Shown: positions 3,601 to 50,415 of the stretch, in pieces
Position numbering within the stretch: position 1 is the first letter of the stretch
How the letters are laid out: each line of letters begins with the position of its first letter
Origin: Ranitomeya imitator
Taxonomy: Eukaryota
NCBI RefSeq assembly: GCF_032444005.1
Contig: NC_091287.1
Span: 554,528,001-554,592,000, forward strand
Direction: 5' to 3'
Length of the DNA stretch: 64,000 nucleotides
The notes under the pieces: model-generated
What the model saw: only the letters and a program-made list of their open reading frames with translations
Databases searched by the model: none
What the model was told of the DNA's origin: nothing
Position numbers and translations under genes: made by a program

Positions 3601-3844
3601 TGCAGCCACTAATTTTTGTGCCTTAACTCTGATGTGCAACCACTGATTTTTGTGCCTTAACTCTGATGTGTAACCACTAATTTTTGTGCCTTAACTCTGA
3701 TGTGCAACCACTAATTTTTGTGCCTTAACTCTGATGTGTAACCACTAAGTTTTGTGCCTCAACTCTGATGAGTAGCCACTAAGTTTTGTGCCTCAACTCT
3801 GATGTGTAACCGCTAAGTTTTGTGCCTTAACTCTGATGTGTAAC
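612..3844. repeat. 34-bp satellite array, left part (~95 units)
   Basis: Head-to-tail unit AACTCTGATGTG(T/C)AACCACTAA(G/T)TTTTGTGCCT(T/C); GTGCC recurs at 783 and 817 (period 34). Interrupted by E1 and resumes at 9643. Confidence 0.97.
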
Positions 3845-3845
3845 T

Positions 3846-4648
3846 TGTTGTGAATTCTGTGGCAGAGCTCCCTCCTGTGGTCACAAGTGGTACTTCGGCT
3901 GATTCTCTCTGTGAGCTTCTGTTGGTGGAGGGAAGTGGTACTGCGGCTTCTGAGTTTCCTCCCTCAGGTGATCTGGTGAGGTCGTTTGGTGCTTCTCTAC
4001 TTAACTCCACCTAATGCTTTGATCCTGGCTTCCTGTCAATGTTCCAGTGTTGGACTTGCTTTTCCCTGGATCATTCCTGTGGCCTGCTGCTCTGCATAGC
4101 TAAGTTCTTCTTTGCTATTTGTTTGCTATTTTTTCTGTCCAGCTTGTCTAATTTGTTGCTGGAAGCTCTGGGACGCAAAGGGTGTACCTCCGTGCCGTTA
4201 GTTCGGTACGGAGGGTCTTTTTGCCCCCTTTGCGTGGTTTTCTTTAGGGTTTTGTGTAGACCGCAAAGTTACCTTTTCTATGCTCGTTCTGTTAAGAAAG
4301 TCGGGCCTCACTTTGCTGAATCTATTTCATCTCTACGTTTGTCTTTTCATCTTAACTCACAGTCATTATATGTGGGGGGCTGCCTTTTCCTTTGGGGTAT
4401 TTCTCTGAGGCAAGGTAGGCTTATTTTCTATCTTCAGGCTAGTTAGTTTCTCAGGCTGTGCCGAGTTGCATAGGCAGAGTTAGGCGCAATCCACGGCTGC
4501 CTCTAGTGTGGTTTGGAGAGGATTAGGGATTGCGGTCTGCAGAGTTCCCACGTCTCAGAGCTCGTTCTATGATTTTGGGTTATTGTCAGATCACTGTATG
4601 TGCTCTGACCGCTATGTCCATTGTAGTACTGAATTGCCTTACATAACA
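3846..4648 (+). repeat. E1 5' LTR
   Basis: Direct repeat of 8840-9642; TG...CA termini. Confidence 0.98.
3998..4036 (+). promoter_or_regulatory. E1 putative TATA-like box (TACTTAA 3998-4004) and predicted transcript 5' end/self-primer (GGCTTCCTGT 4027-4036)
   Basis: 4027-4036 is the reverse complement of the PBS at 4651-4660; AT-rich box 29 nt upstream; same geometry in E2. Confidence 0.7.
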
Positions 4649-4660
4649 GTACAGGAAGCC
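4649..4660 (+). promoter_or_regulatory. E1 primer-binding site, self-priming type (GT-ACAGGAAGCC)
   Basis: No TGG (tRNA CCA complement); 10/10 complementary to 4027-4036. Confidence 0.8.
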
Positions 4661-4670
4661 CAAAGTACTA

Positions 4671-7600
4671 ATGATTCTCAATAGAGGGAAAAAAGAAGAC
4701 CATTTTTTTTTTCTTTGTACTGTGTTTTGCCTTTTTTTTCCCCTAGACATTTGGGTGGTTCAGTACACAGGTGTAGCGATGGACATTAGAAGTCTGTCTT
4801 CATTTGTGGATCAGCTCTCGGCAAGTGTACAAAAGATTCAAGACACTATTGATCAGAAATCTATGTTAGAACCAAGAATTCCTATTCCTGATTTGTTTTT
4901 TGGAAATAGAACTAAGTTTCTGAGTTTCAAAAATAATTGTAAATTATTTCTGGCCTTGAAACCTCGCTCCTCTGGTGATCCAGTTCAACAGGTTTTGATT
5001 GTTATTTCTTTTTTGCGCAGCGACCCTCAGGACTGGGCGTTTTCTCTTGCGCCAGGAGATCCTGCATTGAGTGATATCGATGCGTTTTTCCTGGCGCTCG
5101 GATTGCTGTACGATGAACCTAATTCAGTGGATCAGGCAGAGAAAAATTTGCTGGCTCTTTGTCAGGGTCAGGATGAGATAGAGGTATATTGTCAGAAATT
5201 TGGAAAGTGGTCCGTGCTCACTCAATGGAATGAATCTGCGCTGGCAGCTATGTTCAGAAAGGGTCTCTCTGAAGCCCTTAAGGATGTCATGGTGGGATTT
5301 CCTATGCCTGCTGGTTTGAATGAGTCTATGTCTTTGGCCATTCAGATCGGTCGACGCTTGCGTCAGCGTAAATCTGTGCACCATTTGGCGGTATTACCTG
5401 AGCTTAAACCTGAGCCTATGCAGTGCGATAGGACTTTGACCAGAGTTGAACGGCAAGAACACAGACGTCTGAATGGGCTGTGTTTCTACTGTGGTGATTC
5501 CACTCATGCTATCTCTGATTGTCCTAAGCACACTAAGCGGTTCGCTAGGTCTGCCACCATTGGTACAGTACAGTCAAAATTCCTTCTGTCCGTTACCTTG
5601 ATCTGTTCTTTGTCATCGTATTCTGTCATGGCATTTGTGGATTCAGGCGCTGCCCTGAATTTGATGGACTTGGAGTATGCTAAGCGTTGTGGGTTTCTCT
5701 TAGAACCCTTGCAGTGTCCTATTCCATTGAGAGGAATTGATGCCACGCCTTTGGCCAAGAATAAGCCTCAATACTGGACCCAGCTGACCATGTGCATGGC
5801 TCCTGCACATCAGGAGGTTATTCGCTTTCTGGTGTTGCATAATCTGCATGATGTGGTCGTGTTGGGGTTGCCATGGCTACAAGCCCATAATCCAGTATTA
5901 GATTGGAAATCCATGTCGGTGTCCAGCTGGGGTTGTCAGGGGGTACATGGTGATGTTCCATTTCTGTCAATTTCGTCATCCACCCCTTCTGAGGTTCCAG
6001 AGTTCTTGTCTGATTACCGGGATGTATTTGATGAGCCCAAGTCCGATGCCCTACCTCCGCATAGGGATTGTGATTGTGCTACCAATTTGATTCCTGGTAG
6101 TAAATTCCCAAAAGGTCGACTGTTTAAATTATCCGTGCCTGAGCACGCCGCTATGTGCAGTTATGTGAAGGAATCCCTGGAGAAGGGGCATATTCGCCCG
6201 TCATCGTCACCATTAGGAGCAGGGTTCTTTTTTGTAGCCAAGAAGGATGGTTCGCTGAGACCTTGTATTGATTACCGCCTTCTAAATAAAATCACGGTCA
6301 AATTTCAGTACCCCTTGCCATTGTTATCTGATTTGTTTGCTCGGATTAAGGGGGCTAGTTGGTTCACCAAGATAGATCTTAATGGTGCGTATAATCTGGT
6401 GCGTATCAGGCGAGGAGATGAATGGAAAACTGCATTTAATACGCCCGAGGGTCATTTTGAGTATCTAGTGATGCCATTCGGACTTGCCAATTCTCCATCA
6501 GTGTTTCAGTCCTTTATGCATGACATCTTCCGAGAGTAGCTGAATAAATTCCTGATTGTGTACTTGGATGACATTTTGATCTTCTCGGATGATTGGGAGT
6601 CTCATGTGACGCAGGTCAGAACAGTTTTTCAGGTCCTGCGTGCTAATTCTTTGTTTGTGAAGGGATCAAAGTGTCTCTTTGGTGTGCAGAAGGTTTCATT
6701 TTTGGGGTTCATCTTTTCCCCTTCTACTATCGAGATGGATCCTGTTAAGGTCCAAGCCATCCATGATTGGACTCAGCCGACATCTCTGAAAAGTCTGCAA
6801 AAGTTCCTGGGCTTTGCTAATTTTTATCGTCGCTTCATCTGCAATTTTTCTAGTATTGCCAAACCATTGACCGATTTGACCAAGAAGGGTGCTGATTTGG
6901 TCAATTGGTCTTCTACTGCTGTGGAAGCTTTTCAAGAGTTGAAGCGTCGTTTTTCTTATGCCCCTGTGTTGTGTCAACCAGATGTTTCTCTTCCGTTCCA
7001 GGTCGAGGTTGATGCTTCTGAGATTGGAGCAGGGGCTGTTTTGTCGCAGAGAGCTTCTGATTGCTCAGTGATGAAACCATGCGCTTTTTTTTCCAGGAAG
7101 TTTTCGCCTGCTGAGCGAAATTATGATGTGGGCAACCGAGAGTTGCTGGCCATGAAGTGGGCATTCGAGGAGTGGCGTCATTGGCTTGAAGGAGCTAAGC
7201 ATCGCGTGGTGGTATTGACTGATCATAAGAACTTGACTTATCTTGAGTCTGCTAAGCGGTTGAATCCTAGACAGGCTCGTTGGTCGCTGTTTTTTGCCCG
7301 TTTTGACTTTGTGATTTCGTAACTTCCGGGCTCTAAAAAGGTGAAGGCGGATGCTCTGTTTAGGAGTTTTGTGGCCGACTCTCCGGGTTTGTCTGAGCCG
7401 GCGGGTATCCTCAAGGAAGGAGTAATTGTGTCTGCCATCTCCCCTGATTTGCGGCGGGTGCTGCAAAAATTTCAGGCTAATAAACCTGATCGTTATCCAG
7501 CGGAGAGACTGTTTGTCCCTGATAGGTGGACCAATAAAGTTATCTCTGAGGTTCATTGTTCGGTGTTGGCTGGTCATCCTGGAATCTTTGGTACCAGAGA

Positions 7601-9008
7601 GTTAGTGGCTAGATCCTTTTGGTGGCCGTCTCTGTCGCGGGATGTGCGTGCTTTTGTGCAGTCCTGTGGGATTTGTGCTCGGGCTAAGCCCTGCTGTTCT
7701 CGTGCCAGTGGGTTGCTTTTACCCTTGCCGGTCCCGAAGAGGCCTTGGACACATATCTCTATGGATTTTATTTCTGATCTTTCCGTTTCTCAAAAGATGT
7801 CAGTCATTTGGGTGGTCTGTGATCGCTTTTCTAAGATGGTCCATCTGGTACCCTTATCTAAATTGCCTTCCTCCTCTGATTTGGTGCCATTGTTCTTCCA
7901 GCATGTGGTTCGTTTACATGGCATTCCAGAGAATATCGTTTCTGACAGAGGTTCCCAGTTTGTTTCAAGGTTTTGGCGAGCCTTTTGTGGTAGGATGGGC
8001 ATTGACTTGTCTTTTTCCTCGGCTTTCCATCCTCAGACTAATGGCCAGACCGAACGAACCAATCAGACCTTGGAAACATATCTGAGATGCTTTGTTTCTG
8101 CCGATCAGGATGACTGGGTGTCCTTTTTGCCTTTGGCTGAGTTCGCCCTTAATATTCGGGCCAGCTCGGCTACCTTGGTTTCGCCATTTTTCTGCAATTC
8201 TGGGTTCCATCCTCGTTTCTCTTCAGGACAGGTTGAGTCTTCGGACTGTCCTGGTGTGGATACTGTGGTGGACAGGTTGCAGCAGATTTGGACTCAGGTA
8301 GTGGACAATTTGACCTTGTCCCAGGAGAAGGCTCAACGTTTCGCTAATCGCAGACGCCGTGTGGGTCCCCGACTTCGTGTTGGGGATCTGGTTTGGTTAT
8401 CTTCTCGTCATATTCCTATGAAGGTTTCCTCTCCTAAGTTTAAACCTCGTTTCATTGGTCCGTATAGGATTTCTGAGGTTCTTAATCCTGTGTCTTTTCG
8501 TCTGACCCTTCCAGATTCTTTTTCCATACATAACGTATTCCATAGGTCATTGTTGCGGAGATACGTGGCACCTATGGTTCCATCTGTTGATCCTCCTGCC
8601 CCGATTTTGGTGGAGGGGGAATTGGAGTATATTGTGGAGAAGATTTTGGATTCTCGTGTTTCTAGACGGAAACTCCAGTATCTGGTTAAATGGAAGGGTT
8701 ATGCTCAGGAAGATAATTCCTGGGTTTTTGCCTCTGATGTCCATGCTCCCGATCTTGTTCGTGCCTTTCATGTGGCTCATCCTGGTCGGCCTGGGGGCTC
8801 TGGTGAGGGTTCGGTGACCCCTCCTCAAGGGGAGGGTACTGTTGTGAATTCTGTGGCAGAGCTCCCTCCTGTGGTCACAAGTGGTACTTCGGCTGATTCT
8901 CTCTGTGAGCTTCTGTTGGTGGAGGGAAGTGGTAATGCGGCTTCTGAGTTTCCTCCCTCAGGTGAGCTGGTGAGATCGTTAGGTGCTTCTCTACTTAACT
9001 CCACCTAA
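4671..9008 (+). pseudogene. gag-pol: E1 gag-pol polyprotein, one frame broken by TAG 6537-6539 and TAA 7320-7322
   Basis: ORFs 4671, 6558 and 7341 share a frame. Motifs: CCHC knuckle CFYCGDSTHAISDC, protease FVDSGA, RT YLDD, RNase H DAS/TDHKNL, integrase SMDF/SDRG/QTER, GPY, chromodomain EYIVEKIL...VKWKGY. Both stops align to Tyr codons in E2. Confidence 0.97.
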
Positions 9009-9642
9009 TGCTTTGATCCTGGCTTCCTGTCAATGTTCCAGTGTTGGACTTGCTTTTCCCTGGATCATTCCTGTGGCCTGCTGCTCTGCATAGCTAAGTT
9101 CTTCTTTGCTATTTGTTTGCTATTTTTTCTGTCCAGCTTGTCTAATTTGTTGCTGGAAGCTCTGGGACGCAAAGGGTGTACCTCCGTGCCGTTAGTTCGG
9201 TACGGAGGGTCTTTTTGCCCCCTTTGCGTGGTTTTCTTTAGGGTTTTGTGTAGACCGCAAAGTTACCTTTTCTATCCTCGTTCTGTTAAGAAAGTCGGGC
9301 CTCAATTTGCTGAATCTATTTCATCTCTACGTTTGTCTTTTCATCTTAACTCACAGTCATTATATGTGGGGGGCTGCCTTTTCCTTTGGGGTATTTCTCT
9401 GAGGCAAGGTAGGCTTATTTTCTATCTTCAGGCTAGTTAGTTTCTCAGGCTGTGCCGAGTTGCATAGGCAGAGTTAGGCGCAATCCACAGCTGCCTCTAG
9501 TGTTGTTTGGAGAGGATTAGGGATTGCGGTCTGCAGAGTTCCCACGTCTCAGAGCTCGTTCTATGATTTTGGGTTATTGTCAGATCACTGTATGTGCTCT
9601 GACCGCTATGTCCATTGTAGTACTGAATTCCCTTACATAACA
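8840..9642 (+). repeat. E1 3' LTR
   Basis: Direct repeat of 3846-4648, preceded by PPT plus TAC. Confidence 0.98.
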
Positions 9643-10151
9643 GTAACCACTAAGTTTTGTGCCTTAACTCTGATGTGTAACCGCTAATTTTTGTGCCTCA
9701 ACTGTGATGTGTAACCACTAAGTTTTGTGCCTCAACTCTGATATGCAACCACTATTTTTTGTGCCTCAACTCTGATGTGTAACCGCTAATTTTGGGCCTC
9801 AAATCTGATGTGTAACCGCTAATTTTTGTGCCTCAACTCTGATGTGTAACTGCTAATTTTTGTGCCTCAACTCTGATGAGTAACCACTAAGTTTTGTGCC
9901 TCAATTCTGATGTGTAACCATTAAGTTTTGTGCCTCAACTCTGATGTGTAACCACTAAGTTTTGTGCCTCGACTCTGATGTGTAACCACTAACTTTTGTG
10001 CCTCAACTCTGATGTGTAACCGCTAATTTTTGTGCCTCTACTCTGATGAGTAACCACTAAGTTTTGTGCCTCAACTCTGATGTATAACCATTAAGTTTTG
10101 TGCCTCAACTCTGATGTGTAACCGCTAAGTTTTGTGCATCGACTCTGATGT
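9643..10151. repeat. 34-bp satellite array, right part (~15 units)
   Basis: Same unit as 612-3844, resuming in register after the TSD. Confidence 0.95.
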
Positions 10152-15707: not shown

Positions 15708-17319
15708 CAGGTCCTTCTCAAAAATTAGCATATAGTGTTAAATTTCATTATTTACCATAATGTAATGATTACAATTAAACTTTCATATATTATAGATTCA
15801 TTATCCACCAACTGAAATTTGTCAGGTCTTTTATTGTTTTAATACTGATGATTTTGGCATACAACTCCTGATAACCCAAAAAACCTGTCTCAATAAATTA
15901 GCATATCAAGAAAAGGTTCTCTAAACGACCTATTACCCTAATCTTCTGAATCAACTAATTAACTCTAAACACATGCAAAAGATACCTGAGGCTTTTATAA
16001 ACTCCCTGCCTGGTTCATTACTCAAAACCCCCATCATGGGTAAGACTAGCGACCTGACAGATGTCAAGAAGGCCATCATTGACACCCTCAAGCAAGAGGG
16101 TAAGACCCAGAAAGAAATTTCTCAACAAATAGGCTGTTCCCAGAGTGCTGTATCAAGGCACCTCAATGGTAAGTCTGTTGGAAGGAAACAATGTGGCAGA
16201 AAACGCTGTACAACGAGAAGAGGAGACCGGACCCTGAGGAAGATTGTGGAGAAGGACCGATTCCAGACCTTGGGGAACCTGAGGAAGCAGTGGACTGAGT
16301 CTGGTGTGGAAACATCCAGAGCCACCGTGCACAGGCGTGTGCAGGAAATGGGCTACAGGTGCCGCATTCCCCAGGTAAAGCCACTTTTGAACCATAAACA
16401 GCGGCAGAGGCGCCTGACCTGGGCTACAGAGAAGCAGCACTGGACTGTTGCTAAGTGGTCCCAAGTACTTTTTTCTGATGAAAGCAAATTTTGCATGTCA
16501 TTCGGAAATCAAGGTGCCAGAGTCTGGAGGAAGACTGGGGAGAAGGAAATGCCAAAATGCCTGAAGTCCAGTGTCAAGTACCCACAGTCAGTGATGGTGT
16601 GGGGTGCCATGTCAGCTGCTGGTGTTGGTCCACTGTGTTTCATCAAGGGCAGGGTCAATGCAGCTAGCTATCAGGAGATTTTGGAGCACTTCATGCTTCC
16701 ATCGGCTGAAATGCTTTATGGAGATGAAGATTTCATTTTTCAGCACGACCTGGCACCTGCTCACAGTGCCAAAACCACTGGTAAATGGTTTACTGACCAT
16801 GGTATTACTGTGCTCAATTGGCCTGCCAACTCTCCTGACCTGAACCCCATAGAGAATCTGTGGGATATTGTGAAGAGAAAGTTGAGAGACGCAAGACCCA
16901 ACACTCTGGATGAGCTTAAGGCCGCTATTGAAGCATCCTGGGCCTCCATAACATCTCAGCAGTGTCACAGGCTGATTGCCTCCATGCCACGCCGCATTGA
17001 AGCAGTCATTTCTGCCAAAGGATTCCCGACCAAGTATTGAGGGCATAACTGAACATTATTATTTGATGGTTTTTTTGTTTGTTATTAAAAAAACACTTTT
17101 ATTTGATTGGATGGGTGAAATATGCTAATTTATTGAGACAGGTTTTTTGGGTTATCAGGAGTTGTATGCCAAAATCATCAGTATTAAAACAATAAAAGAC
17201 ATGACAAATTTCAGTTGGTGGATAATGAATCTATAATATATGAAAGTTTAATTGTAATCATTACATTATGGTAAATAATGAAATTTAACACTATATGCTA
17301 ATTTTTTGAGAAGGACCTG
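15708..17319 (+). mobile_element. Intact Tc1-family (IR/DR type) DNA transposon, 1612 bp
   Basis: TA on both sides (15706-7, 17320-1); TIRs 15708-15906 and 17120-17319 differ by one substitution and one A in a run; AAATTAGCATAT repeated at both ends of each TIR. Confidence 0.97.
16036..17040 (+). CDS. Tc1 DD34E transposase, 334 aa (upstream in-frame ATG at 15973)
   Basis: MGKTSDL start; HTH-like N-terminus; FSDESKF, FQHDLAPAH, SPDLNPIENLW with 34 residues between the second D and E; uninterrupted. Confidence 0.95.
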   Translation: MGKTSDLTDVKKAIIDTLKQEGKTQKEISQQIGCSQSAVSRHLNGKSVGRKQCGRKRCTTRRGDRTLRKIVEKDRFQTLGNLRKQWTESGVETSRATVHRRVQEMGYRCRIPQVKPLLNHKQRQRRLTWATEKQHWTVAKWSQVLFSDESKFCMSFGNQGARVWRKTGEKEMPKCLKSSVKYPQSVMVWGAMSAAGVGPLCFIKGRVNAASYQEILEHFMLPSAEMLYGDEDFIFQHDLAPAHSAKTTGKWFTDHGITVLNWPANSPDLNPIENLWDIVKRKLRDARPNTLDELKAAIEASWASITSQQCHRLIASMPRRIEAVISAKGFPTKY

Positions 17320-17321
17320 TA

Positions 17322-18321
17322 GTAACATAGTAACATAGTTAGTAAGGCCGAAAAAAGACATTTGTCCATCCAGTTCAGCCTATATTCCATCATAATAAAT
17401 CCCCAGATCTACGTCCTTCTACAGAACCTAATAATTGTATGATACAATATTGTTCTGCTCCAGGAAGACATCCAGGCCTCTCTTGAACCCCTCGACTGAG
17501 TTCGCCATCACCACCTCCTCAGGCAAGCAATTCCAGATTCTCACTGCCCTAACAGTAAAGAATCCTCTTCTATGTTGGTGGAAAAACCTTCTCTCCTCCA
17601 GACGCAAAGAATGCCCCCTTGTGCCCGTCACCTTCCTTGGTATAAACAGATCCTCAGCGAGATATTTGTATTGTCCCCTTATATACTTATATATGGTTAT
17701 TAGATCGCCCCTCAGTCGTCTTTTTTCTAGACTAAATAATCCTAATTTCGCTAATCTATCTGGGTATTGTAGTTCTCCCATCCCCTTTATTAATTTTGTT
17801 GCCCTCCTTTGTACTCTCTCTAGTTCCATTATATCCTTCCTGAGCACCGGTGCCCAAAACTGGACACAGTACTCCATGTGCGGTCTAACTAGGGATTTGT
17901 ACAGAGGCAGTATAATGCTCTCATCATGTGTATCCAGACCTCTTTTAATGCACCCCATGATCCTGTTTGCCTTGGCAGCTGCTGCCTGGCACTGGTTGCT
18001 CCAAGTAAGTTTATCATTAACTAGGATCCCCAAGTCCTTCTCCCTGTCAGATTTACCCAGTGGTTTCCCGTTCAGTGTGTAATGGTGATATTGATTCCTT
18101 CTTCCCATGTGTATAACCTTACATTTATCATTGTTAAACCTCATCTGCCACCTTTCAGCCCAAGTTTCCAACTTATCCAGATCCATCTGTAGCAGAATAC
18201 TATCTTCTCTTGTATTAACTGCTTTACATAGTTTTGTATCATCTGCAAATATCGATATTTTACTGTGTAAACCTTCTACCAGATCATTAATGAATATGTT
18301 GAAGAGAACAGGTCCCAATAC
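17322..18321 (-). mobile_element. 5'-truncated CR1 LINE (RT C-terminus, 3' UTR, (GTAACATA)n tail)
   Basis: Open frame LGPVLFNIFINDL...FADDTKL...LEKRRLRGDL...RGLDVFL; 8-bp repeat tail; the tail continues left of the Tc1 at 15697-15707. Confidence 0.93.
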
Positions 18322-18339
18322 CGTAACGGTCCCGTACAA

Positions 18340-18725
18340 AGATACGTATATATAACCTATAATTAATTGCACAAAAAGACCTCAATGTACAAAAACTTCC
18401 AAAATTTTATTAAAAAATAATCCAAACTATAAAATACAGCATGATGGAAATGGTACCAATATAGAGGCACCCCAGGCCAGAGGTAAGGCTATTACAACAT
18501 TAAAACCCACCGACACATATATCAAACTATCACTAGGGTGAACAGTCTCACTCGCCAAACAGCATAGTAACATATTCTACCCTAGATACATCACAATAAG
18601 TGCGGCAACATGAGAGTGCAAATGTACAAAATAGTAGCGTTTGTATTACCTCTGGTCTGATGGTGCAACGACCCCTACGCGCGTTTCGGCTGTGTGTGCC
18701 TTCTTCCGGGGGACTTACCTGGGGT
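18340..18725 (-). mobile_element. Penelope-like element pseudo-LTR fragment
   Basis: Contains a minimal hammerhead motif preceded by AG|GTAAG, followed by an AT-rich tail with AATAAA-like signals; no coding part retained. Confidence 0.55.
18672..18712 (-). ncRNA. Minimal type I hammerhead ribozyme motif (U4G variant)
   Basis: Minus strand CCCC-CGGAAGA-A-GGC(ACACACA)GCC-GAAA-C(GCGC)GU-A-GGGG: stems I, II and III all pair; GUA cleavage triplet. Confidence 0.7.
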
Positions 18726-37577: not shown

Positions 37578-38495
37578 GATATATAATAAACATTTATTGC
37601 AATTCATATTTGATATATTAATTTTCTCTGGATTTATTTAAAAAAAGCATTTCACAGGGAAGCCTAAATTAGCCAGCAGACAATTTTTACACCCCATATT
37701 TCTGTGGGATGATGTAGTCGTGTGACTTCTGCTGTCGGTATGAGGCTCCTGTCTTACAAATAAGGAATTATCAATATTAATTTATCACATCAATCCAATC
37801 TTCTCGGTTTCGGCCTCTGTGATGTATATAAATCACAGGTAACAGTAAAATCCGTCCCGTAATGAGACGATAAGATCCGAGCCGTACAGTAAGTCAGTGT
37901 CACTGCGCTGTCAGGTTACATCCCGGTTCCTCAAGAATATTAATACAATATGGATTCTTCAACACAAATAGACGCTGTAGCTTGGAGAGAGCCGGTCGAT
38001 ATAATGTGTAAGTAAGCAGCGTAATCACTGGTGGTATTGTAAATCCGCAGCTACTATAGACATATAAATATTAACTACTGTATCACAAGACTAATAAATA
38101 ATTCAGGACTAAATAAAGAGTGGTGGCGGGGGAGGGGCAGGCTGCTTTCAGCATTGATGTTTTGCACGAACATTCATTAGATTGGGATGAAATTCCTTAT
38201 TGATCAATTGAAGTGTAAAAAGCTTCTCTCTATATTCGGGGGCTGCAGGAAAAAACAAGAGGGCGCAATTAAAAGTAAAAGGAAGAATGTTCAGGAGGGA
38301 TGGCGGTGATCTGGGAGAGGCAGCAGCAACGCAAGGTAGAGATCAATAAGATGAGAACATTCTGAGTGTGAAAGAAAAGTGTCTGCAACAGAGAACATGT
38401 CTACCGTACTGCAGGCGTCATGGAGGAGTCAGGAGAATAAGATGCCAGGACGAGGACGGTCACCAAACCAGTACAAAACTCCACAGCTGGGAGAG

Positions 38496-44400: not shown

Positions 44401-44728
44401 CATAGGGGCAGTATTATAGTAGTTATATTCTTGTACATAGGAGCAGTATTATAGTAGTTATATTCTTGTACATAAGAGCAGTATTATAGTAGTTATATTC
44501 CTGTACATAGGGGCAGTATTATAGTAGTTATATTCTTGTACATAAGAGCAGTATTATAGCAGTTATATTCTTGTACATAGGGTCAGTATTACAGTAGTTA
44601 TATTCTTGTACATAGTGAGCAGTATTATAGTAGTTATATTCTTGTACATAGGAGCAGTATTATAGTAGTTGTATTCTTTTACATAGGAGCAGTATTATAG
44701 TAGTTATATTCTTGTACATAGGAGCAGT
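38496..44728. repeat. 35-bp satellite array, left part
   Basis: Unit TATATTCTTGTACATAGGAGCAGTATTATAGTAGT; recurs at 39061 and 39096. Confidence 0.97.
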
Positions 44729-45475
44729 TGTTGTGAATTCTGTGGCTGAGTTCACTTCTGTGGTCACAAGTGGTATTGCAGTCTCTGGGCTTCCTCCCTC
44801 AGGTGTTTTGGTGAGCTCGTTGGCTGCCTTGCTATTTAGCTCCACCTGAGTCTGTCTTCCTTGCTCCTTGTCAATGTTCCAGTGTTGGATCTGAGCTACT
44901 GCATCTTTCCTTGGGCCTGCTGCTCTGCTAGATAAGTGCTTCTAGTTTGTTTTCTGTTTTTTCTGTCCAGCTTGTTATTATCTTTTGCTGGAAGCTCTGA
45001 GAAGCAAAGGGGTGCACCGCCGTGCTGTTAGTTCGGCACGGTGGGTCTTTTTGCCCCTTTGCGTGGTTTTCGTTTTAGGGTTTTTTGTAGACTGCATAGT
45101 TCTCTTTGCTATCCTCGCTCTGTCTAGAATATCGGGCCTCACTTTGCTGAATCTATTTCATTCCTACGTTTGTCTTTTCATCTTGCTAACAGTCATTATG
45201 TGTGGGGGCTGCCTATTCCTTTGGGGTATTTCTCTGAGGTAAGTCAGGCTTGTATTTCTGTCTTCAGGCTAGTCAGCTCCTCAGGCAGTGCCGAGTTGCA
45301 TAGGTAGTGATAGGCGCAATCCACTGCTGCTTATAGTTGTGTGAGGATAGATCAGGTACTGCAGTCTACAGAGATTCCACGTCTCAGAGCTCGTCCTATT
45401 GTTTTTGGTTATTGCCAGATCTCTGTATGTGCGCTGATTACTGCACGCTGTGTTGCCTGATTGCCAGCCATAACA
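44729..45475 (+). repeat. E2 5' LTR
   Basis: 747-bp direct repeat of 49668-50415. Confidence 0.98.
44833..44871 (+). promoter_or_regulatory. E2 putative TATA-like box (TATTTAG 44833-44839) and predicted 5' end/self-primer (GCTCCTTGT 44863-44871)
   Basis: 44863-44871 is the reverse complement of the PBS at 45478-45486; box 30 nt upstream. Confidence 0.7.
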
Positions 45476-45486
45476 GTACAAGGAGC
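45476..45486 (+). promoter_or_regulatory. E2 primer-binding site, self-priming type (GT-ACAAGGAGC)
   Basis: No TGG; 9/9 complementary to 44863-44871. Confidence 0.8.
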
Positions 45487-45492
45487 CTTTCA

Positions 45493-48400
45493 ATGATTTC
45501 CAATAGAGGGAAAAAAGAAATCCTGACATCATTTTTTTTTCTTAGCTCTGTCTTCAGTCTTTTTTTTCCCCTAGACATTAGAGTGCTTCAGGACACAGCT
45601 GTGGACATGGATATTCAGGCTCTGTGCTCCTCAATGGATAATCTCGTTGTAAATGTACAAAAGATTCAAGATACTATTGATCAGAAATCGATGCTAGAAC
45701 CAAGAATTCCGATTCCTGATTTGTTTTTTGGTGACAGAACTAAGTTCCTGAGCTTCAGAAATAATTGTAAGCTATTTTTGGCCTTGAAACCTCATTCTTC
45801 TGGTAATCCTATTCAACAGGTTTTGATTATTATTTCTTTTTTGCGCGGCGACCCACAGGACTGGGCGTTTTCTCTTGCACCAGGAGATTCTGCATTGAGT
45901 AATGTTGATGCATTTTTCCAGGCGCTGGGATTGCTTTACGATGAGCCTAATTCAGTGGATCAAGCTGAGAAAAATCTGCTGGCTTTATGCCAGGGTCAGG
46001 ATGATGTAGAAGTATATTGTCAGAAATTTAGAAAATGGTCAGTACTTACTCTGTGGAATGAATCTGCACTAGCGGCTTTGTTCAGAAAGGGTCTCTCTGA
46101 AGCTCTTAAGGATGTAATGGTGGGATTTCCTATGCCTGCTGGTTTGAATGAGTCTATGTCCTTGGCCATTCAGATCGGTCGTCGCTTGCGCGAGCGTAAA
46201 TCTGTGCACCATCTGGCGGTATTGTCTGGGAGTAAGCCTGAGCCTATGCAGTGCGACAGGACTATGACTAAAGTAGAACGGCACGAACACAGACGTCTGA
46301 ACAGACTGTGTTTCTATTGTGGTGATTCTACTCATGCTATTTCTAATTGTCCTAAACGCACTAGGCGGTTCGATAGCTCTGCCGTTATTGGTACTGTACA
46401 GTCCAAATTCCTTTTGTCCATTACCTTAATGTGCTCTTTGTCATCATATTCTGTCATGGCGTTTGTGGATTCAGGCGCTGCCCTGAATCTGATGGATTTG
46501 GATTATGCTAAACGTTGTGGATTTTTCTTGGAGCCTTTGCGGTGTCCTATTCCGTTGAGAGGAATTGATGCTACACCTCTGGCCAAGAATAAGCCTCAGT
46601 ACTGGGCCCAGCTGACCATGTGCATGGCTCCTGCACATCAGGAAGTTATTCGCTTTTTGGTACTGCATAATTTGCATGATGTGGTCGTGTTGGGGTTGCC
46701 ATGGCTACAAACCCATAATCCAGTATTGGATTGGAACTCTATGTCGGTAACCAGCTGGGGTTGTCAGGGAGTACATGGTGATGTTCCATTTTTGTCTATT
46801 TCGTCATCCATTCCTTCTGACATCCCAGAGTTCTTGTCGGACTTTCAGGATGTATTTGAAGAGTCCAAGTCTGATGCCCTTCCTCCGCATAGGAATTGTG
46901 ATTGTGCTATCGATTTGATTCCTGGTAGTAAATTCCCTAAGGGTCGTTTATTTAATTTGTCCGTACCTGAACACACCGCTATGCGCAGTTATGTGAAGGA
47001 GTCCCTGGAGAAGGGACATATTCGCCCATCGTCGTCACCATTGGGAGCAGGGTTCTTTTTTGTAGCCAAGAAGGATGGTTCGCTAAGACCGTGTATTGAT
47101 TACCGCCTTCTTAATAAGATCACTGTTAAGTTTCAGTATCCCTTGCCATTGATTTCTGACTTGTTTGCTCGGATTAAGGGGGCTAGTTGGTTTACTAAGA
47201 TTGATCTTCGTGGTGCGTATAATCTGGTGAGAATCAGGCAGGGAGATGAATGGAAAACGGCATTTAATACGCCCGAGGGTCATTTTGAGTATCTGGTGAT
47301 GCCGTTCGGACTTGCCAATGCTCCATCTGTTTTTCAGTCTTTTATGCATGACATTTTCCGTGAGTATCTGGATAAATTCTTGATTGTTTACTTGGATGAC
47401 ATTTTGATCTTCTCAGATGATTGGGAGTCTCATGTGAAGCAAGTCAGAATGGTTTTCCAGGTACTGCGTGCTAATTCCTTGTTCGTGAAGGGATCAAAGT
47501 GTCTCTTCGGTGTGCAGAAAGTTTCATTTTTGGGGTTCATCTTTTCCCCTTCTACTATCGAGATGGATCCGGTTAAGGTTCAGGCCATCCAGGATTGGAC
47601 TCAGCCGACATCTCTAAAAAGTTTGCAGAAATTCCTGGGCTTTGCTAATTTTTATCGTCGCTTCATCTGTAATTTTTCTAGCATTGCCAGACCATTGACC
47701 GATTTGACCAAGAAGGGAGCTGATTTGGTTAATTGGTCTTCTGCTGCCGTGGAAGCTTTTCAGGAGTTGAAGCGTCGTTTTTGCTGTGCCCCTGTGTTGT
47801 GTCAACCTGATGTTTCTCTTCCGTTCCAGGTCGAGGTTGATGCTTCTGAGATTGGTGCAGGGGCGGTTTTGTCACAGAGAGGTTCTGGTTGCTCAGTGTT
47901 CAAACCATGTGCTTTCTTTTCCAGGAAATTTTCTGCTGCTGAGCGTAATTATGATGTGGGCAACCGAGAGTTGCTGGCCATGAAGTGGGCATTCGAGAAG
48001 TGGCGTCATTGGCTTGAGGGTGCTAAGCATCGCGTGGTGGTTTTGACTGATCATAAGAACCTTACTTATCTTGAGTCTGCCAAGCGCTTGAATCCTAGAC
48101 AGGCCCGTTGGTCGTTATTTTTTGCTCGTTTTGATTTTGTGATTTCATACCTTCCGGGCTCTAAAAATGTGAAGGCGGATGCTCTGTCTAGGAGTTTTGT
48201 GCCCGACTCTCCGGGGTTATCTGAGCCGGCGAGTATCCTCAAGGAAGGAGTCATTGTGTCTGCCATCTCCCCTGATTTGCGGAGAGTGTTGCAGAAATTT
48301 CAGGCTAATAAACCTGATCGTTGTCCGGCCGAGAAACTGTTCGTCCCTGATAGGTGGACTAGTAAAGTTATCTCTGAACTTCATTGTTCGGTGCTGGCCG

Positions 48401-49788
48401 GTCATCCAGGAATCTTTGGTACCAGGGAGTTGGTTGCTAGATCCTTCTGGTGGCCATCTCTGTCACGGGATGTGCGTGCTTTTGTGCAGTCCTGTGGAAT
48501 TTGTGCTAGGGCTAAGCCCTGCTGTTCACGTGCCAGTGGGTTGCTTTTGCCCTTGCCGGTCCCGAAGAGGCCTTGGACACATATTTCGATGGATTTCATT
48601 TCTGACCTTCCCGTTTCTCAAAAGATGTCTGTCATTTGGGTGGTCTGTGATCGCTTTTCTAAAATGGTCCATCTGGTGCCCTTGGTTAAATTGCCTTCCT
48701 CCTCTGATTTGGTGCCTTTGTTCTTCCAGCATGTGGTTCGTTTACATGGCATTCCTGAGAATATTGTTTCTGACAGAGGTTCCCAGTTTGTCTCGAGGTT
48801 CTGGCGAGCCTTTTGTGGTAGGATGGGCATTGACCTATCTTTTTCCTCGGCCTTCCATCCTCAGACTAATGGCCAGACCGAACGAACCAATCAGACCTTG
48901 GAAACATATCTGAGATGTTTTGTTTCCGCTGACCAGGATGATTGGGTGTCATTTTTGCCGTTGGCTGAGTTCGCCCTTAATAATCGGGCCAGCTCGGCTA
49001 CCTTGGTCTCTCCATTTTTCTGCAATTCTGGGTTCCATCCTCGTTTCTCTTCAGGACAGGTTGAGTCTTCGGACTGTCCTGGTGTGGATTATGTGGTGGA
49101 CAGGTTGCAGCAGATCTGGACTCAGGTAGTGGACAATTTGACCTTGTCCCAGGAGAAGGCTCAGCTTTTCGCTAATCGCAGACGCCGTGTGGGACCCCGA
49201 CTTCGTGTTGGGGATCTGGTTTGGTTATCTTCTCGTCATATACCTATGAAGGTTTCCTCTCCTAAATTTAAACCTCGTTTTATTGGTCCGTATAGGATTT
49301 CTGAGATTCTCAATCCGGTGTCTTTTCGTCTGACCCTCCCAGACTCCTTTTCCATACATAATGTATTCCATAGGTCGTTGTTGAGGAGATACGTGGCACC
49401 TATGGTTCCATCTGTGGAGCCTCCTGCCCCTGTTTTGGTGGAGGGGGAATTGGAGTATATTGTGGAGAAGATTTTGGATTCTCGTGTCTCTAGACGGAAA
49501 CTCCAGTATCTGGTCAAATGGAAGGGTTATGCTCAGGAAGATAATTCCTGGGTTTTTGCCTCTGATGTCCATGCCCCAGATCTTGTTCGTGCCTTTCATG
49601 TGGCTCATCCTGGTCGGCCTGGGGGTTCTGGTGAGGGTTCGGTGACCCCTCCTCAAGGGGGGGGTACTGTTGTGAATTCTGTGGCTGAGTTCACTTCTGT
49701 GGTCACAAGTGGTATTGCAGTCTCTGGGCTTCCTCCCTCAGGTGTTTTGGTGAGCTCGTTGGCTGCCTTGCTATTTAGCTCCACCTGA
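45493..49788 (+). CDS. gag-pol: E2 Gag-PR-RT-RNaseH-IN-chromodomain polyprotein (likely functional start ATG 45607)
   Basis: No stop or frameshift; CFYCGDSTHAISNC, FVDSGA, YLDD, DAS/ELLA/TDH, H..C..C, MDF/SDRG/QTER, GPY, EYIVEKIL...VKWKGY. Confidence 0.97.
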   Translation: MISNRGKKEILTSFFFLSSVFSLFFPLDIRVLQDTAVDMDIQALCSSMDNLVVNVQKIQDTIDQKSMLEPRIPIPDLFFGDRTKFLSFRNNCKLFLALKPHSSGNPIQQVLIIISFLRGDPQDWAFSLAPGDSALSNVDAFFQALGLLYDEPNSVDQAEKNLLALCQGQDDVEVYCQKFRKWSVLTLWNESALAALFRKGLSEALKDVMVGFPMPAGLNESMSLAIQIGRRLRERKSVHHLAVLSGSKPEPMQCDRTMTKVERHEHRRLNRLCFYCGDSTHAISNCPKRTRRFDSSAVIGTVQSKFLLSITLMCSLSSYSVMAFVDSGAALNLMDLDYAKRCGFFLEPLRCPIPLRGIDATPLAKNKPQYWAQLTMCMAPAHQEVIRFLVLHNLHDVVVLGLPWLQTHNPVLDWNSMSVTSWGCQGVHGDVPFLSISSSIPSDIPEFLSDFQDVFEESKSDALPPHRNCDCAIDLIPGSKFPKGRLFNLSVPEHTAMRSYVKESLEKGHIRPSSSPLGAGFFFVAKKDGSLRPCIDYRLLNKITVKFQYPLPLISDLFARIKGASWFTKIDLRGAYNLVRIRQGDEWKTAFNTPEGHFEYLVMPFGLANAPSVFQSFMHDIFREYLDKFLIVYLDDILIFSDDWESHVKQVRMVFQVLRANSLFVKGSKCLFGVQKVSFLGFIFSPSTIEMDPVKVQAIQDWTQPTSLKSLQKFLGFANFYRRFICNFSSIARPLTDLTKKGADLVNWSSAAVEAFQELKRRFCCAPVLCQPDVSLPFQVEVDASEIGAGAVLSQRGSGCSVFKPCAFFSRKFSAAERNYDVGNRELLAMKWAFEKWRHWLEGAKHRVVVLTDHKNLTYLESAKRLNPRQARWSLFFARFDFVISYLPGSKNVKADALSRSFVPDSPGLSEPASILKEGVIVSAISPDLRRVLQKFQANKPDRCPAEKLFVPDRWTSKVISELHCSVLAGHPGIFGTRELVARSFWWPSLSRDVRAFVQSCGICARAKPCCSRASGLLLPLPVPKRPWTHISMDFISDLPVSQKMSVIWVVCDRFSKMVHLVPLVKLPSSSDLVPLFFQHVVRLHGIPENIVSDRGSQFVSRFWRAFCGRMGIDLSFSSAFHPQTNGQTERTNQTLETYLRCFVSADQDDWVSFLPLAEFALNNRASSATLVSPFFCNSGFHPRFSSGQVESSDCPGVDYVVDRLQQIWTQVVDNLTLSQEKAQLFANRRRRVGPRLRVGDLVWLSSRHIPMKVSSPKFKPRFIGPYRISEILNPVSFRLTLPDSFSIHNVFHRSLLRRYVAPMVPSVEPPAPVLVEGELEYIVEKILDSRVSRRKLQYLVKWKGYAQEDNSWVFASDVHAPDLVRAFHVAHPGRPGGSGEGSVTPPQGGGTVVNSVAEFTSVVTSGIAVSGLPPSGVLVSSLAALLFSST

Positions 49789-50415
49789 GTCTGTCTTCCT
49801 TGCTCCTTGTCAATGTTCCAGTGTTGGATCTGAGCTACTGCATCTTTCCTTGGGCCTGCTGCTCTGCTAGATAAGTGCTTCTAGTTTGTTTTCTGTTTTT
49901 TCTGTCCAGCTTGTTATTATCTTTTGCTGGAAGCTCTGAGAAGCAAAGGGGTGCACCGCCGTGCTGTTAGTTCGGCACGGTGGGTCTTTTTGCCCCTTTG
50001 CGTGGTTTTCGTTTTAGGGTTTTTTGTAGACTGCATAGTTCTCTTTGCTATCCTCGCTCTGTCTAGAATATCGGGCCTCACTTTGCTGAATCTATTTCAT
50101 TCCTACGTTTGTCTTTTCATCTTGCTAACAGTCATTATATGTGGGGGCTGCCTATTCCTTTGGGGTATTTCTCTGAGGTAAGTCAGGCTTGTATTTCTAT
50201 CTTCAGGCTAGTCAGCTCCTCAGGCAGTGCCGAGTTGCATAGGTAGTTGATAGGCGCAATCCACTGCTGCTTCCAGTTGTGTGAGGATAGATCAGGTACT
50301 GCAGTCTACAGAGATTCCACGTCTCAGAGCTTGTCCTATTGTTTTGGGTTATTGCCAGATCTCTGTATGTGCGCTGATTACTGCACGCTGTGTTGCCTGA
50401 TTGCCAGCCATAACA
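49668..50415 (+). repeat. E2 3' LTR
   Basis: 748-bp direct repeat of 44729-45475. Confidence 0.98.

What the first reader, a model, noticed from the sequence alone, without database searches (positions are those of the whole stretch)
4027..4660. tRNA-independent self-priming supported by compensatory covariation between two elements
Seen: neither PBS begins with TGG. E1 PBS ACAGGAAGCC (4651-4660) pairs 10/10 with GGCTTCCTGT (4027-4036). E2 PBS ACAAGGAGC (45478-45486) pairs 9/9 with GCTCCTTGT (44863-44871) at the homologous LTR position, both followed by CAATGTTCC. The two PBSs differ at positions 4 and 6, and both partner bases changed to keep the pairing. A TATA-like box sits 29-30 nt upstream in each. 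Rough chance of a 10-mer match in 800 bp is about 1e-3 before counting position and covariation. Established: fission-yeast Tf1 primes from the first 11 nt of its own RNA, cut off by RNase H, and this has been proposed for vertebrate Tf1/sushi elements. Inferred: TSS at G4027/G44863 and a 9-10 nt primer. The 2-nt gap (GT) between LTR and PBS, mirrored by AC on the PPT side (GTAC-TGTT...AACA-GTAC), predicts dinucleotide end processing.
Basis: partly seen in the sequence, partly recalled or inferred. Interest (0 to 1): 0.85.

Follow-up and report, generated by a model that had tools for sequence, protein, structure and literature searches.

The report
Self-primed frog jumping gene (Tf1/sushi type)
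Two young copies of a poison-frog jumping gene carry, right after their first long repeat, a 9-10 letter site that pairs perfectly with the predicted first letters of their own RNA, so they most likely start DNA copying with a piece of their own transcript instead of a host tRNA; this trick is already known for their family, so this is a well-supported but ordinary new example.

Summary
In E1, GGCTTCCTGT (4027-4036) is the exact reverse complement of ACAGGAAGCC (4651-4660). In E2, GCTCCTTGT (44863-44871) is the exact reverse complement of ACAAGGAGC (45478-45486). The sites are homologous in an LTR alignment, and both PBS differences are matched by complementary changes.

E1 and E2 are young Ty3/gypsy chromoviruses, with LTR pairs about 99% identical. 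The host is a dendrobatid frog, almost certainly Ranitomeya imitator.

I fetched six more relatives at 42-54% polyprotein identity. Each has a different perfect 9-11-nt complement at the same two places: 1-3 nt after the 5' LTR's terminal CA, and 29-31 nt after a TATA-like box. Across the eight elements, 72 of 72 anchored cells are Watson-Crick, against a mean of 23.7 in mismatched-partner controls. The Fisher-combined chance p is about 4e-10.

Tf1-type self-priming is therefore strongly supported in silico. Three things remain unshown: the RNA 5' end, RNase H cleavage, and the dinucleotide end processing. Public runs gave only short contigs. The Tf1 "pretzel" side duplexes were not recovered.

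Self-priming is a published hallmark of the Tf1/sushi group, vertebrates included (Butler et al. 2001), so this is a new member of a known kind. The scan noted the same signature on another piece of this genome (s1-288191).

The parts
3846..4648 (+). E1 5' LTR (803 nt, TGTTGTG...CATAACA). U3 is 3846-4026; R-U5 runs from 4027.
   Evidence: blastn self-comparison; sequence; alignment A1
3998..4004 (+). E1 TATA-like box TACTTAA. Its first T is 29 nt before the self-primer.
4027..4036 (+). E1 self-primer GGCTTCCTGT. Predicted first 10 nt of the transcript.
   Evidence: The whole duplex with the PBS is present in the unconstrained MFE fold of the 694-nt leader.
4037..4054 (+). Block CAATGTTCCAGTGTTGGA, invariant between E1 and E2, directly after the predicted cleavage site. 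Role unknown.
   Evidence: alignment A1
4649..4650 (+). GT between the LTR's terminal CA and the PBS. These would be the first two template bases copied.
4651..4660 (+). E1 primer-binding site ACAGGAAGCC
4779..9008 (+). E1 gag-pol reading frame, interrupted by two in-frame stops (6537-6539 and 7320-7322). 89-95% identical to E2.
8827..8839 (+). E1 polypurine tract AAGGGGAGGG followed by TAC
8840..9642 (+). E1 3' LTR, 98.9% identical to the 5' LTR. Self-primer copy at 9021-9030.
44729..45475 (+). E2 5' LTR (747 nt)
44833..44839 (+). E2 TATA-like box TATTTAG, 30 nt before the self-primer
44863..44871 (+). E2 self-primer GCTCCTTGT
45476..45477 (+). GT gap between the LTR end and the PBS in E2
45478..45486 (+). 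E2 primer-binding site ACAAGGAGC
45607..49788 (+). E2 intact single gag-pol ORF: gag with a CCHC knuckle, RT, RNase H, integrase, Tf2-1-type SH3, chromodomain. It reads through the PPT and 120 nt into the 3' LTR.
49655..49667 (+). E2 polypurine tract AAGGGGGGGG followed by TAC
49668..50415 (+). E2 3' LTR, 99.1% identical to the 5' LTR. Self-primer copy at 49802-49810.

Best explanation
E1 and E2 are young chromoviruses (Ty3/gypsy, Tf1/sushi type) of a dendrobatid frog. They initiate minus-strand DNA synthesis by Tf1-type self-priming.

Proposed steps, with E2 coordinates (E1 in brackets):
1. RNA polymerase II starts at G44863 (G4027), 30 (29) nt after a TATA-like box.
2. The first 9 (10) nt of the transcript fold back over about 615 nt onto the PBS at 45478-45486 (4651-4660).
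3. The element's RNase H cuts the RNA at the end of the duplex, after U44871 (U4036), leaving a 3' OH.
4. Reverse transcriptase extends this primer through GT, U5 and R, then jumps to the 3' R.
5. When plus-strand strong-stop DNA later copies the attached RNA primer, the PBS of the progeny is rewritten from the primer. A change in the primer copy of the LTR is therefore converted into a matched PBS change within two cycles. This explains the clean covariation.

Status of each point:
- Shown here: the complementarity, its position at both landmarks, its conservation with changing sequence in eight lineages, and the absence of a tRNA-type PBS.
- Inferred: the exact TSS, the cleavage, the primer-to-PBS copying, and the trimming of the GT by integrase.
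For: Exact complements at the stated coordinates.

Element anatomy and protein domains: Retrotrans_gag, RVT_1, RNase H, integrase, SH3_Tf2-1, Chromo.

Six further relatives, L001, L002, L004, L007, L008 and L011, at 42-54% polyprotein identity to E2. Each has its own perfect 9-11-nt complement:
- it starts 1-3 nt after the LTR's CA;
- its partner starts 29-31 nt after a TATA-like box;
- in 7 of 8 the partner has a pyrimidine at -1 and G at +1.

Statistics:
- Per-element empirical p is 0.001-0.007. The Fisher-combined p over six independent lineages (L011 not included) is 4e-10, before counting the TATA spacing.
- In the anchored table, 72/72 cells are Watson-Crick with 3-4 pair types per position. 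Mismatched-partner controls have mean 23.7 and maximum 38.

Compensatory double changes: E1 versus E2 at two pairs, and L007 versus L011 at one pair.

Folding: the unconstrained MFE fold of the whole R-U5-PBS leader contains the full duplex in E1, E2, L001b and L002. It lies within 1.4-4 kcal/mol of the MFE in L004 and L007.

Room for another PBS: in the five relatives whose gag ATG was located (L001b, L002, L007, L008, L011), the leader from the LTR end to it is only 13-30 nt, so no other PBS fits.

Literature: self-priming is described as a common feature of Tf1/sushi elements from fungi to vertebrates.
Against: - No RNA 5' end was observed. The four public runs laid on E2 are short contigs (100-450 nt) of uncertain RNA/DNA origin, and they yielded no table of molecule starts.
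- The two extra duplexes of the Tf1 'pretzel' were not supported. RNAduplex z-scores are near 0 in 13 of 14 tests (L011 was not included).
- The U5 hairpin next to the PBS is no better than shuffles.
- No canonical poly(A) hexamer lies downstream of the primer in the E1/E2 LTRs, so the R/U5 limit is undefined.
- Host tRNAs could not be compared.
- In L011 the base before the primer is G, not a pyrimidine.
Confidence: 0.85

Rival explanations
1. The PBS is bound by a host tRNA, tRNA half or tRNA fragment through an internal region, as in copia or half-tRNA-primed plant elements. On this view the complement in the LTR is incidental or only regulatory.
For: - Host tRNAs could not be examined: none lies in the window and no frog tRNA set is available in the tools.
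- Half-tRNA priming exists in other LTR elements (PMC6317226).
Against: - Eight lineages have eight different PBS sequences, each matched by its own LTR. tRNAs are far too conserved to track that.
- No TGG lies at the position where a tRNA CCA end would pair in E1, E2, L001, L002, L004, L008 or L011.
- The leaders are too short for a second PBS.
Confidence: 0.04
2. The duplex is a conserved long-range 5' leader structure, for packaging, dimerisation or translational control. It closes the R-U5 loop but does not supply the primer; priming would use something else.
For: - Retroviral leaders contain U5-leader and U5-IR stems around the PBS.
- The duplex appears in the MFE folds as a loop-closing helix.
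- Nothing here shows a 3' OH at the end of the duplex.
Against: - One arm sits exactly where minus-strand synthesis must begin to regenerate the LTR end (1-3 nt after CA). The other arm sits at the predicted cap site in all eight elements.
- No alternative primer site exists in the short leaders.
- The homologous arrangement was shown experimentally to prime in Tf1, as reported.
Confidence: 0.08
3. The complementarity is due to chance.
For: A single 9-mer match in an LTR of about 750 nt is not very rare (5/1033 control windows for E2).
Against: - Combined p is about 4e-10 over six independent lineages, before counting position relative to the TATA box.
- 72/72 cells are paired against a maximum of 38 in controls.
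Confidence: 0.01

Closest known systems
[quoted passage not shown]
   Same: - The PBS just after the 5' LTR is complementary to the start of the element's own transcript rather than to a tRNA.
- The LTR ends in CA.
- The integrase carries a chromodomain.
- Gag-pol is a single ORF (E2).
- A 5-bp target duplication is likely.
   Different: - The primer is 9-10 nt rather than 11.
- The loop closed by the duplex is about 615 nt.
- Gag has a CCHC knuckle, which the fission-yeast elements lack.
- The three-duplex 'pretzel' could not be recovered here.
- There is no experimental evidence for this element.
Vertebrate Tf1/sushi group (sushi-ichi of Takifugu and relatives; Butler et al. 2001, J Mol Evol 52:260; Goodwin and Poulter 2001)
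   Same: - Vertebrate chromoviruses for which self-priming was already proposed from the same kind of complementarity.
- The LTR termini fit the published Sushi motifs TGTYANR...CNTNACA.
- The fish-like relatives fetched here carry AATAAA close to the LTR's 3' end, as described for Sushi LTRs.
   Different: - The host is a dendrobatid frog.
- E2 has a single ORF, whereas most non-yeast members use a -1 frameshift.
- The frog-type LTRs lack a canonical poly(A) hexamer after the primer.
- The Butler paper itself was not held, so its amphibian examples could not be compared.
Tj1 of S. japonicus and Tosmo/Tcry elements
   Same: Self-priming was inferred for these in the same way, from complementarity between the PBS and the predicted RNA 5' end.
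   Different: Their hosts are fungi. [quoted passage not shown] Tj1 has been shown to transpose.
tRNA-primed Ty3/gypsy elements and retroviruses
   Same: - The overall reverse-transcription plan.
- The PBS lies next to U5, and the PPT next to U3.
- There are two extra bases beyond CA, as in HIV-1 (CAGT).
   Different: The primer is not a tRNA, and the PBS is 9-10 nt rather than about 18 nt and does not start with TGG.

Membership tests
Tf1-type self-primed LTR retrotransposons (mechanism) | The PBS immediately downstream of the 5' LTR is complementary to a sequence within the same LTR. | tested here: met
   10/10 in E1 and 9/9 in E2. 9-11 nt in six relatives.
Tf1-type self-primed LTR retrotransposons (mechanism) | The complementary sequence is the very 5' end of the transcript. 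| tested here: inconclusive
   A TATA-like box lies 29-31 nt upstream in 8/8, and a pyrimidine/G start context is present in 7/8. No RNA 5' ends could be read: the runs were contigs only.
Tf1-type self-primed LTR retrotransposons (mechanism) | Primer and PBS co-vary (compensatory changes keep the pairing). | tested here: met
   Two compensated pairs between E1 and E2 and one between L007 and L011. 72/72 cells are Watson-Crick over eight elements, with 3-4 pair types per position.
Tf1-type self-primed LTR retrotransposons (mechanism) | No PBS complementary to a tRNA 3' end. | tested here: inconclusive
   No TGG at the PBS position, the PBS differs in every lineage, and the leaders are only 13-30 nt in relatives. 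Host tRNAs were not available.
Tf1-type self-primed LTR retrotransposons (mechanism) | A three-duplex 'pretzel' RNA structure around the primer:PBS duplex. | tested here: inconclusive
   The central duplex is present in the MFE folds. The side duplexes are not better than shuffles, except in L001b. The U5 hairpin has a z-score of about 0.
Tf1-type self-primed LTR retrotransposons (mechanism) | RNase H of the element's RT cleaves the RNA at the end of the duplex to free the primer. | not testable with these tools
   This needs biochemistry. An RNase H domain is present.
Tf1/sushi clade of chromoviruses (Metaviridae) | Ty3/gypsy domain order: gag, PR, RT, RNase H, IN. | tested here: met
   Pfam hits in that order. 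The closest solved relative is Ty3 Gag-Pol, 7q5b, E = 3e-139.
Tf1/sushi clade of chromoviruses (Metaviridae) | [quoted passage not shown] | tested here: met
   PF00385 at residues 1322-1369 of E2 and in E1 piece 3, plus PF24626 SH3_Tf2-1.
Tf1/sushi clade of chromoviruses (Metaviridae) | Phylogenetic placement with Tf1 and sushi-ichi rather than with the plant chromoviruses. | not tested
   No reference sequences of Tf1 or sushi-ichi could be obtained with the tools. Indirect evidence: the best non-vertebrate relatives are fungal, at 41% identity over RT-IN. This agrees with the 'Fungi/Vertebrates cluster' described.

The most novel reading that the evidence does not exclude
The base directly 3' of the PBS core is C in all eight lineages (...GC|C in seven, ...AC|C in one). 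In six of them the base before the primer cannot pair with it.

One reading the data do not exclude is that this C answers the cap. Either it stacks or pairs with the cap guanosine of the folded-back 5' end, or it matches the extra C that reverse transcriptases add opposite a cap when plus-strand strong-stop synthesis copies the short capped primer to its very end. In the second case the 3' end would stay fully paired for the second strand transfer.

If so, self-primed elements would be built around the cap of their own RNA, a feature not described for Tf1.
Probability: 0.12. Interest if true: 0.55.

Novelty: new member of a known kind. Interest (0 to 1): 0.3.

Why it matters
**What it adds.** It extends a mechanism proven only in fission yeast to young, probably still mobile elements of a giant frog genome. 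The comparative evidence is clean: eight lineages, every base pair co-varying. It also gives a precise, testable prediction of the transcription start and the primer.

**Genome context.** Gypsy-type elements make up a large share of dendrobatid genomes (PMC6278860). Knowing that these copies need an exactly placed start site to replicate gives the host a simple way to disarm them. In S. pombe, shifting the Tf2 start site yields RNA that cannot support reverse transcription (PMC5341516).

**Annotation.** Tools that look only for tRNA-type PBSs will misjudge such elements.

The mechanism itself is not new.

Tried and rejected
**Reading the TSS from public runs.**
- The look-up of sequencing runs listed 19 holders, all Logan contigs with a guessed RNA label and no raw reads.
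- Read laying on the whole of E2 with four runs gave contigs of 100-450 nt. There was no table of molecule starts or ends and no informative variants at the primer or PBS.
- This says nothing for or against the TSS.

**Fetching other subfamilies from the R. imitator assembly and from one large ENA sample.** Six look-ups returned no DNA because the files were too large.

**Pretzel side duplexes.** RNAduplex against shuffles gave z between -1.3 and +1.6, except L001b at -2.5. The side duplexes are not supported, but this method does not disprove them.

**U5 hairpin abutting the PBS (xxUGU...ACAGU).** It is present in the E1, E2 and L007 folds but is no better than shuffles.

**Other negative searches.**
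- Rfam scan of 3800-4850: only a chance-level miRNA-like hit, E = 0.54.
- tRNA scan of the window: none found.

**Papers not held in the library.** Butler et al. 2001, Levin 1995, Lin and Levin 1998, and Atwood-Moore et al. 2006. Their content is cited only through papers that quote them.

**Chance** was rejected as an explanation.

Full report
**What is there**

The window holds two full-length LTR retrotransposons of one family.
- E1 has LTRs at 3846-4648 and 8840-9642, 98.9% identical.
- E2 has LTRs at 44729-45475 and 49668-50415, 99.1% identical.
- The E1 and E2 LTRs are about 81% identical to each other.
- The LTRs read TGTTGTG...CATAACA. A polypurine tract plus TAC precedes each 3' LTR.
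- Both elements sit inside 35-bp satellite arrays, with a GTAAC (E1) or AGCAG (E2) target duplication.

E2 carries one intact gag-pol ORF (45607-49788). It encodes a gag domain with a CCHC knuckle, RT, RNase H, integrase zinc and core domains, a Tf2-1-type SH3 and a C-terminal chromodomain. E1 has the same frame interrupted by two in-frame stops. These are chromoviruses of the Ty3/gypsy superfamily; the closest solved structure is Ty3 Gag-Pol.

Many Ranitomeya imitator proteins are 96-100% identical to E2 pol. Other identities are Dendrobates tinctorius 78%, Phyllobates 64%, Xenopus 56%, teleosts about 53% and fungi 41%. The host is therefore a dendrobatid frog, almost certainly R. imitator.

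**The observation**

- The 10-mer ACAGGAAGCC occurs three times in 64 kb: once as the PBS and, on the other strand, once in each E1 LTR. Shuffles expect 0.12.
- In the alignment of the four LTRs the two primer sites are homologous. The two PBS differences between E1 and E2 (positions 4 and 6) are matched by complementary changes at the paired primer positions. A third primer difference, at position 1, costs E2 its tenth pair.
- TATA-like boxes start 29 nt (E1) and 30 nt (E2) before the primer.

**Evidence from relatives**

I used the pol protein to find relatives and fetched the DNA of six further lineages from ENA and Logan contigs:
- L001 and L002, of the frog type;
- L004 (the same element as L003, L005 and L006), L007, L008 and L011, all fish-like, two of them with separate gag and pol ORFs.

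Their polyproteins are 42-54% identical to E2 and 42-66% identical to each other.

In each one the bases 1-3 nt after the 5' LTR's terminal CA form a perfect 9-11-nt complement with a site in the LTR. That site begins 29-31 nt after the first base of a TATA-like box. The sequences are all different:

| Element | Primer | PBS |
|---|---|---|
| E1 | GGCTTCCTGT | ACAGGAAGCC |
| E2 | GCTCCTTGT | ACAAGGAGC |
| L001b | GCGGTTTATA | TATAAACCGC |
| L002 | GCCTGTTATT | AATAACAGGC |
| L004 | GCGAAGTCTT | AAGACTTCGC |
| L007 | GCCAGATCG | CGATCTGGC |
| L008 | GTTGGTTTGT | ACAAACCAAC |
| L011 | GGCCGGATCGT | ACGATCCGGCC |

Further points:
- L007 and L011 differ by one PBS base and by the complementary primer base. 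This is a second, independent compensatory change.
- Against other windows of the same element, the observed match length is reached in 0-7 of about 1,100 windows per element. Fisher's combination over six independent lineages (L011 not included) gives about 4e-10, without counting the position relative to the TATA box.
- Anchored on the PBS 5' end, all 72 cells of the first nine positions are Watson-Crick, with three or four pair types at every position. When each primer is paired with another element's PBS, the mean is 23.7 and the maximum 38.
- The base before the primer is a pyrimidine and the first primer base is G in seven of eight, the usual polymerase II start context.
- In the five relatives whose gag ATG was located (L001b, L002, L007, L008, L011), the leader from the LTR end to it is only 13-30 nt. 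No other primer site can be hidden there.
- None of E1, E2, L001, L002, L004, L008 or L011 has the TGG that a tRNA CCA end requires at that place.

**Folding**

- The unconstrained minimum-free-energy fold of the whole R-U5-PBS RNA (350-694 nt) contains the complete primer:PBS helix in E1, E2, L001b and L002. The helix costs 1.4-4 kcal/mol in L004 and L007.
- The two additional helices of the Tf1 'pretzel' (described) are not supported by a duplex-versus-shuffle test.
- A small U5 hairpin next to the PBS is no better than chance.

**How it most likely works**

This section follows the mechanism established for Tf1, as summarised.
1. Transcription starts at the first primer base.
2. The 5' end folds back on the PBS.
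3. RNase H cuts at the end of the duplex.
4. RT extends the 9-10-nt RNA through GT, U5 and R, and the product transfers to the 3' R.

From the general logic of reverse transcription (inference), the plus-strand copy of the PBS is templated by the primer itself, as retroviral PBSs are rewritten from their tRNA. A mutation in the primer copy of the 3' LTR is first inherited by both LTRs and then written into the PBS one cycle later. The perfect covariation is therefore what self-priming predicts even without a second mutation. It speaks for the primer's identity and not merely for a conserved RNA helix.

**What is not shown**

- *The TSS.* The only public runs holding the element are assembled contigs of uncertain RNA or DNA origin. 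Laid on E2 they are 100-450 nt long and give no molecule ends.
- *The R/U5 limit.* The frog-type LTRs have no canonical poly(A) hexamer after the primer, whereas L004 and L007 have AATAAA 46-70 nt before the LTR end.
- *The 'dinucleotide end processing'.* It rests on analogy with retroviruses. The gap is GT in E1, E2, L008 and L011, but T, G, G and GTA in the others. In Tf1 about half of the cDNA keeps a single-stranded PBS copy, and RT adds untemplated bases (PMC11042837). The real ends may therefore be more complex.
- *Host tRNAs.* They could not be compared.

**Comparison with what is known**

[quoted passage not shown] It was proposed for vertebrate members by Butler et al. 2001 and Goodwin and Poulter 2001.

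The LTR termini match the published Sushi integrase-recognition motifs.

The differences are matters of degree:
- a 9-10-nt primer rather than 11 nt;
- a loop of about 615 nt;
- a single ORF, whereas most non-yeast members frameshift;
- a CCHC knuckle that fission-yeast elements lack;
- no obvious poly(A) signal.

I could not place the element in a tree with Tf1 and sushi-ichi because no reference sequences were obtainable. Clade membership therefore rests on domain content and on fungal elements being the nearest non-vertebrate relatives.

The scan had already noted the same signature on another piece of this genome (s1-288191).

**Verdict**

The mechanism is a known family trait, so this is a new member of a known kind and of modest interest. 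The odd details worth a look are the invariant C after the PBS, the missing poly(A) signal, and a strong conserved stem-loop in R.

Noticed in passing
window 4176-4232 (E1) and 45004-45062 (E2): A strong conserved stem-loop lies about 150 nt after the predicted TSS. It has an 11-bp inner stem, a UUAGUU loop and an outer CAAAGGG/CCCUUUG stem, with a U5 run between the inner stem and the 3' arm of the outer stem. Free energy is -31.9 and -38.9 kcal/mol, z = -5.4 and -6.6. One base pair is changed on both sides between E1 and E2. Function unknown; it could be a packaging, dimerisation or 3'-end signal.
   Followed up: partly
window 4027-4648 and 44863-45475; L001, L002: There is no canonical or common variant poly(A) hexamer downstream of the primer in the frog-type LTRs (one AAGAAA in E1 only). 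The fish-like relatives L004 and L007 carry AATAAA 46-70 nt before the LTR end.
   Followed up: partly
window 4661, 45487; same position in L001, L002, L004, L007, L008, L011: The base right after the PBS core is C in all eight lineages (GCC in seven, ACC in one). In six of them the base before the primer cannot pair with it. Unexplained.
   Followed up: partly
window 3845 and 44728: One extra T lies between the 5-bp target duplication and the 5' LTR in E1 (GTAAC-T-TGTTG, against a 3' flank of GTAACC). The same T is present in E2, where it could equally be a sixth duplicated base. Possible explanations are a 6-bp duplication with a mutation in E1, or an untemplated base joined at integration.
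   Followed up: no
window 45239-45574 (E2) and about 4410-4747 (E1): A candidate leader intron: GAG|GTAAGT in R-U5, and a long pyrimidine tract ending CCCCTAG| just before the gag ATG. It would remove the PBS. This was already noted by the scan as s1-307430. No contig with this joint was seen in four runs, which proves nothing. The relatives have leaders of only 13-30 nt and no such segment.
   Followed up: partly
window at least 3700-3845 and 9643-9720; about 38400-44728 and 50416-50480: Both elements are inserted in two different 35-bp satellite arrays. The array next to E2 spans more than 6 kb and is extremely abundant in the public runs (first depth bin).
   Followed up: no
L001 5160-6124; L008 4440-5750; contig: [quoted passage not shown] This could be an assembly artefact of collapsed repeats. 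It could also be real tandems, like those made by integrase-independent, PBS-homology insertion of Tf1 (PMC11042837).
   Followed up: no
window 49655-49788 and 8827-9008: The pol reading frame runs through the polypurine tract and about 120-170 nt into the 3' LTR (U3). The integrase tail is therefore encoded by LTR sequence.
   Followed up: no
window 4682-4727 and 45505-45548: An A-run/T-run hairpin lies in the E1/E2 leader between the PBS and the gag ATG (GAGGGAAAAAAGAAG...CTTTTTTTTTTCTTTG), and is seen in the MFE folds. There is a chance-level mir-373-like Rfam hit at 4686-4742 (E = 0.54).
   Followed up: no
window 15973-18372: Further ORFs of 215-355 aa on both strands, not examined.
   Followed up: no
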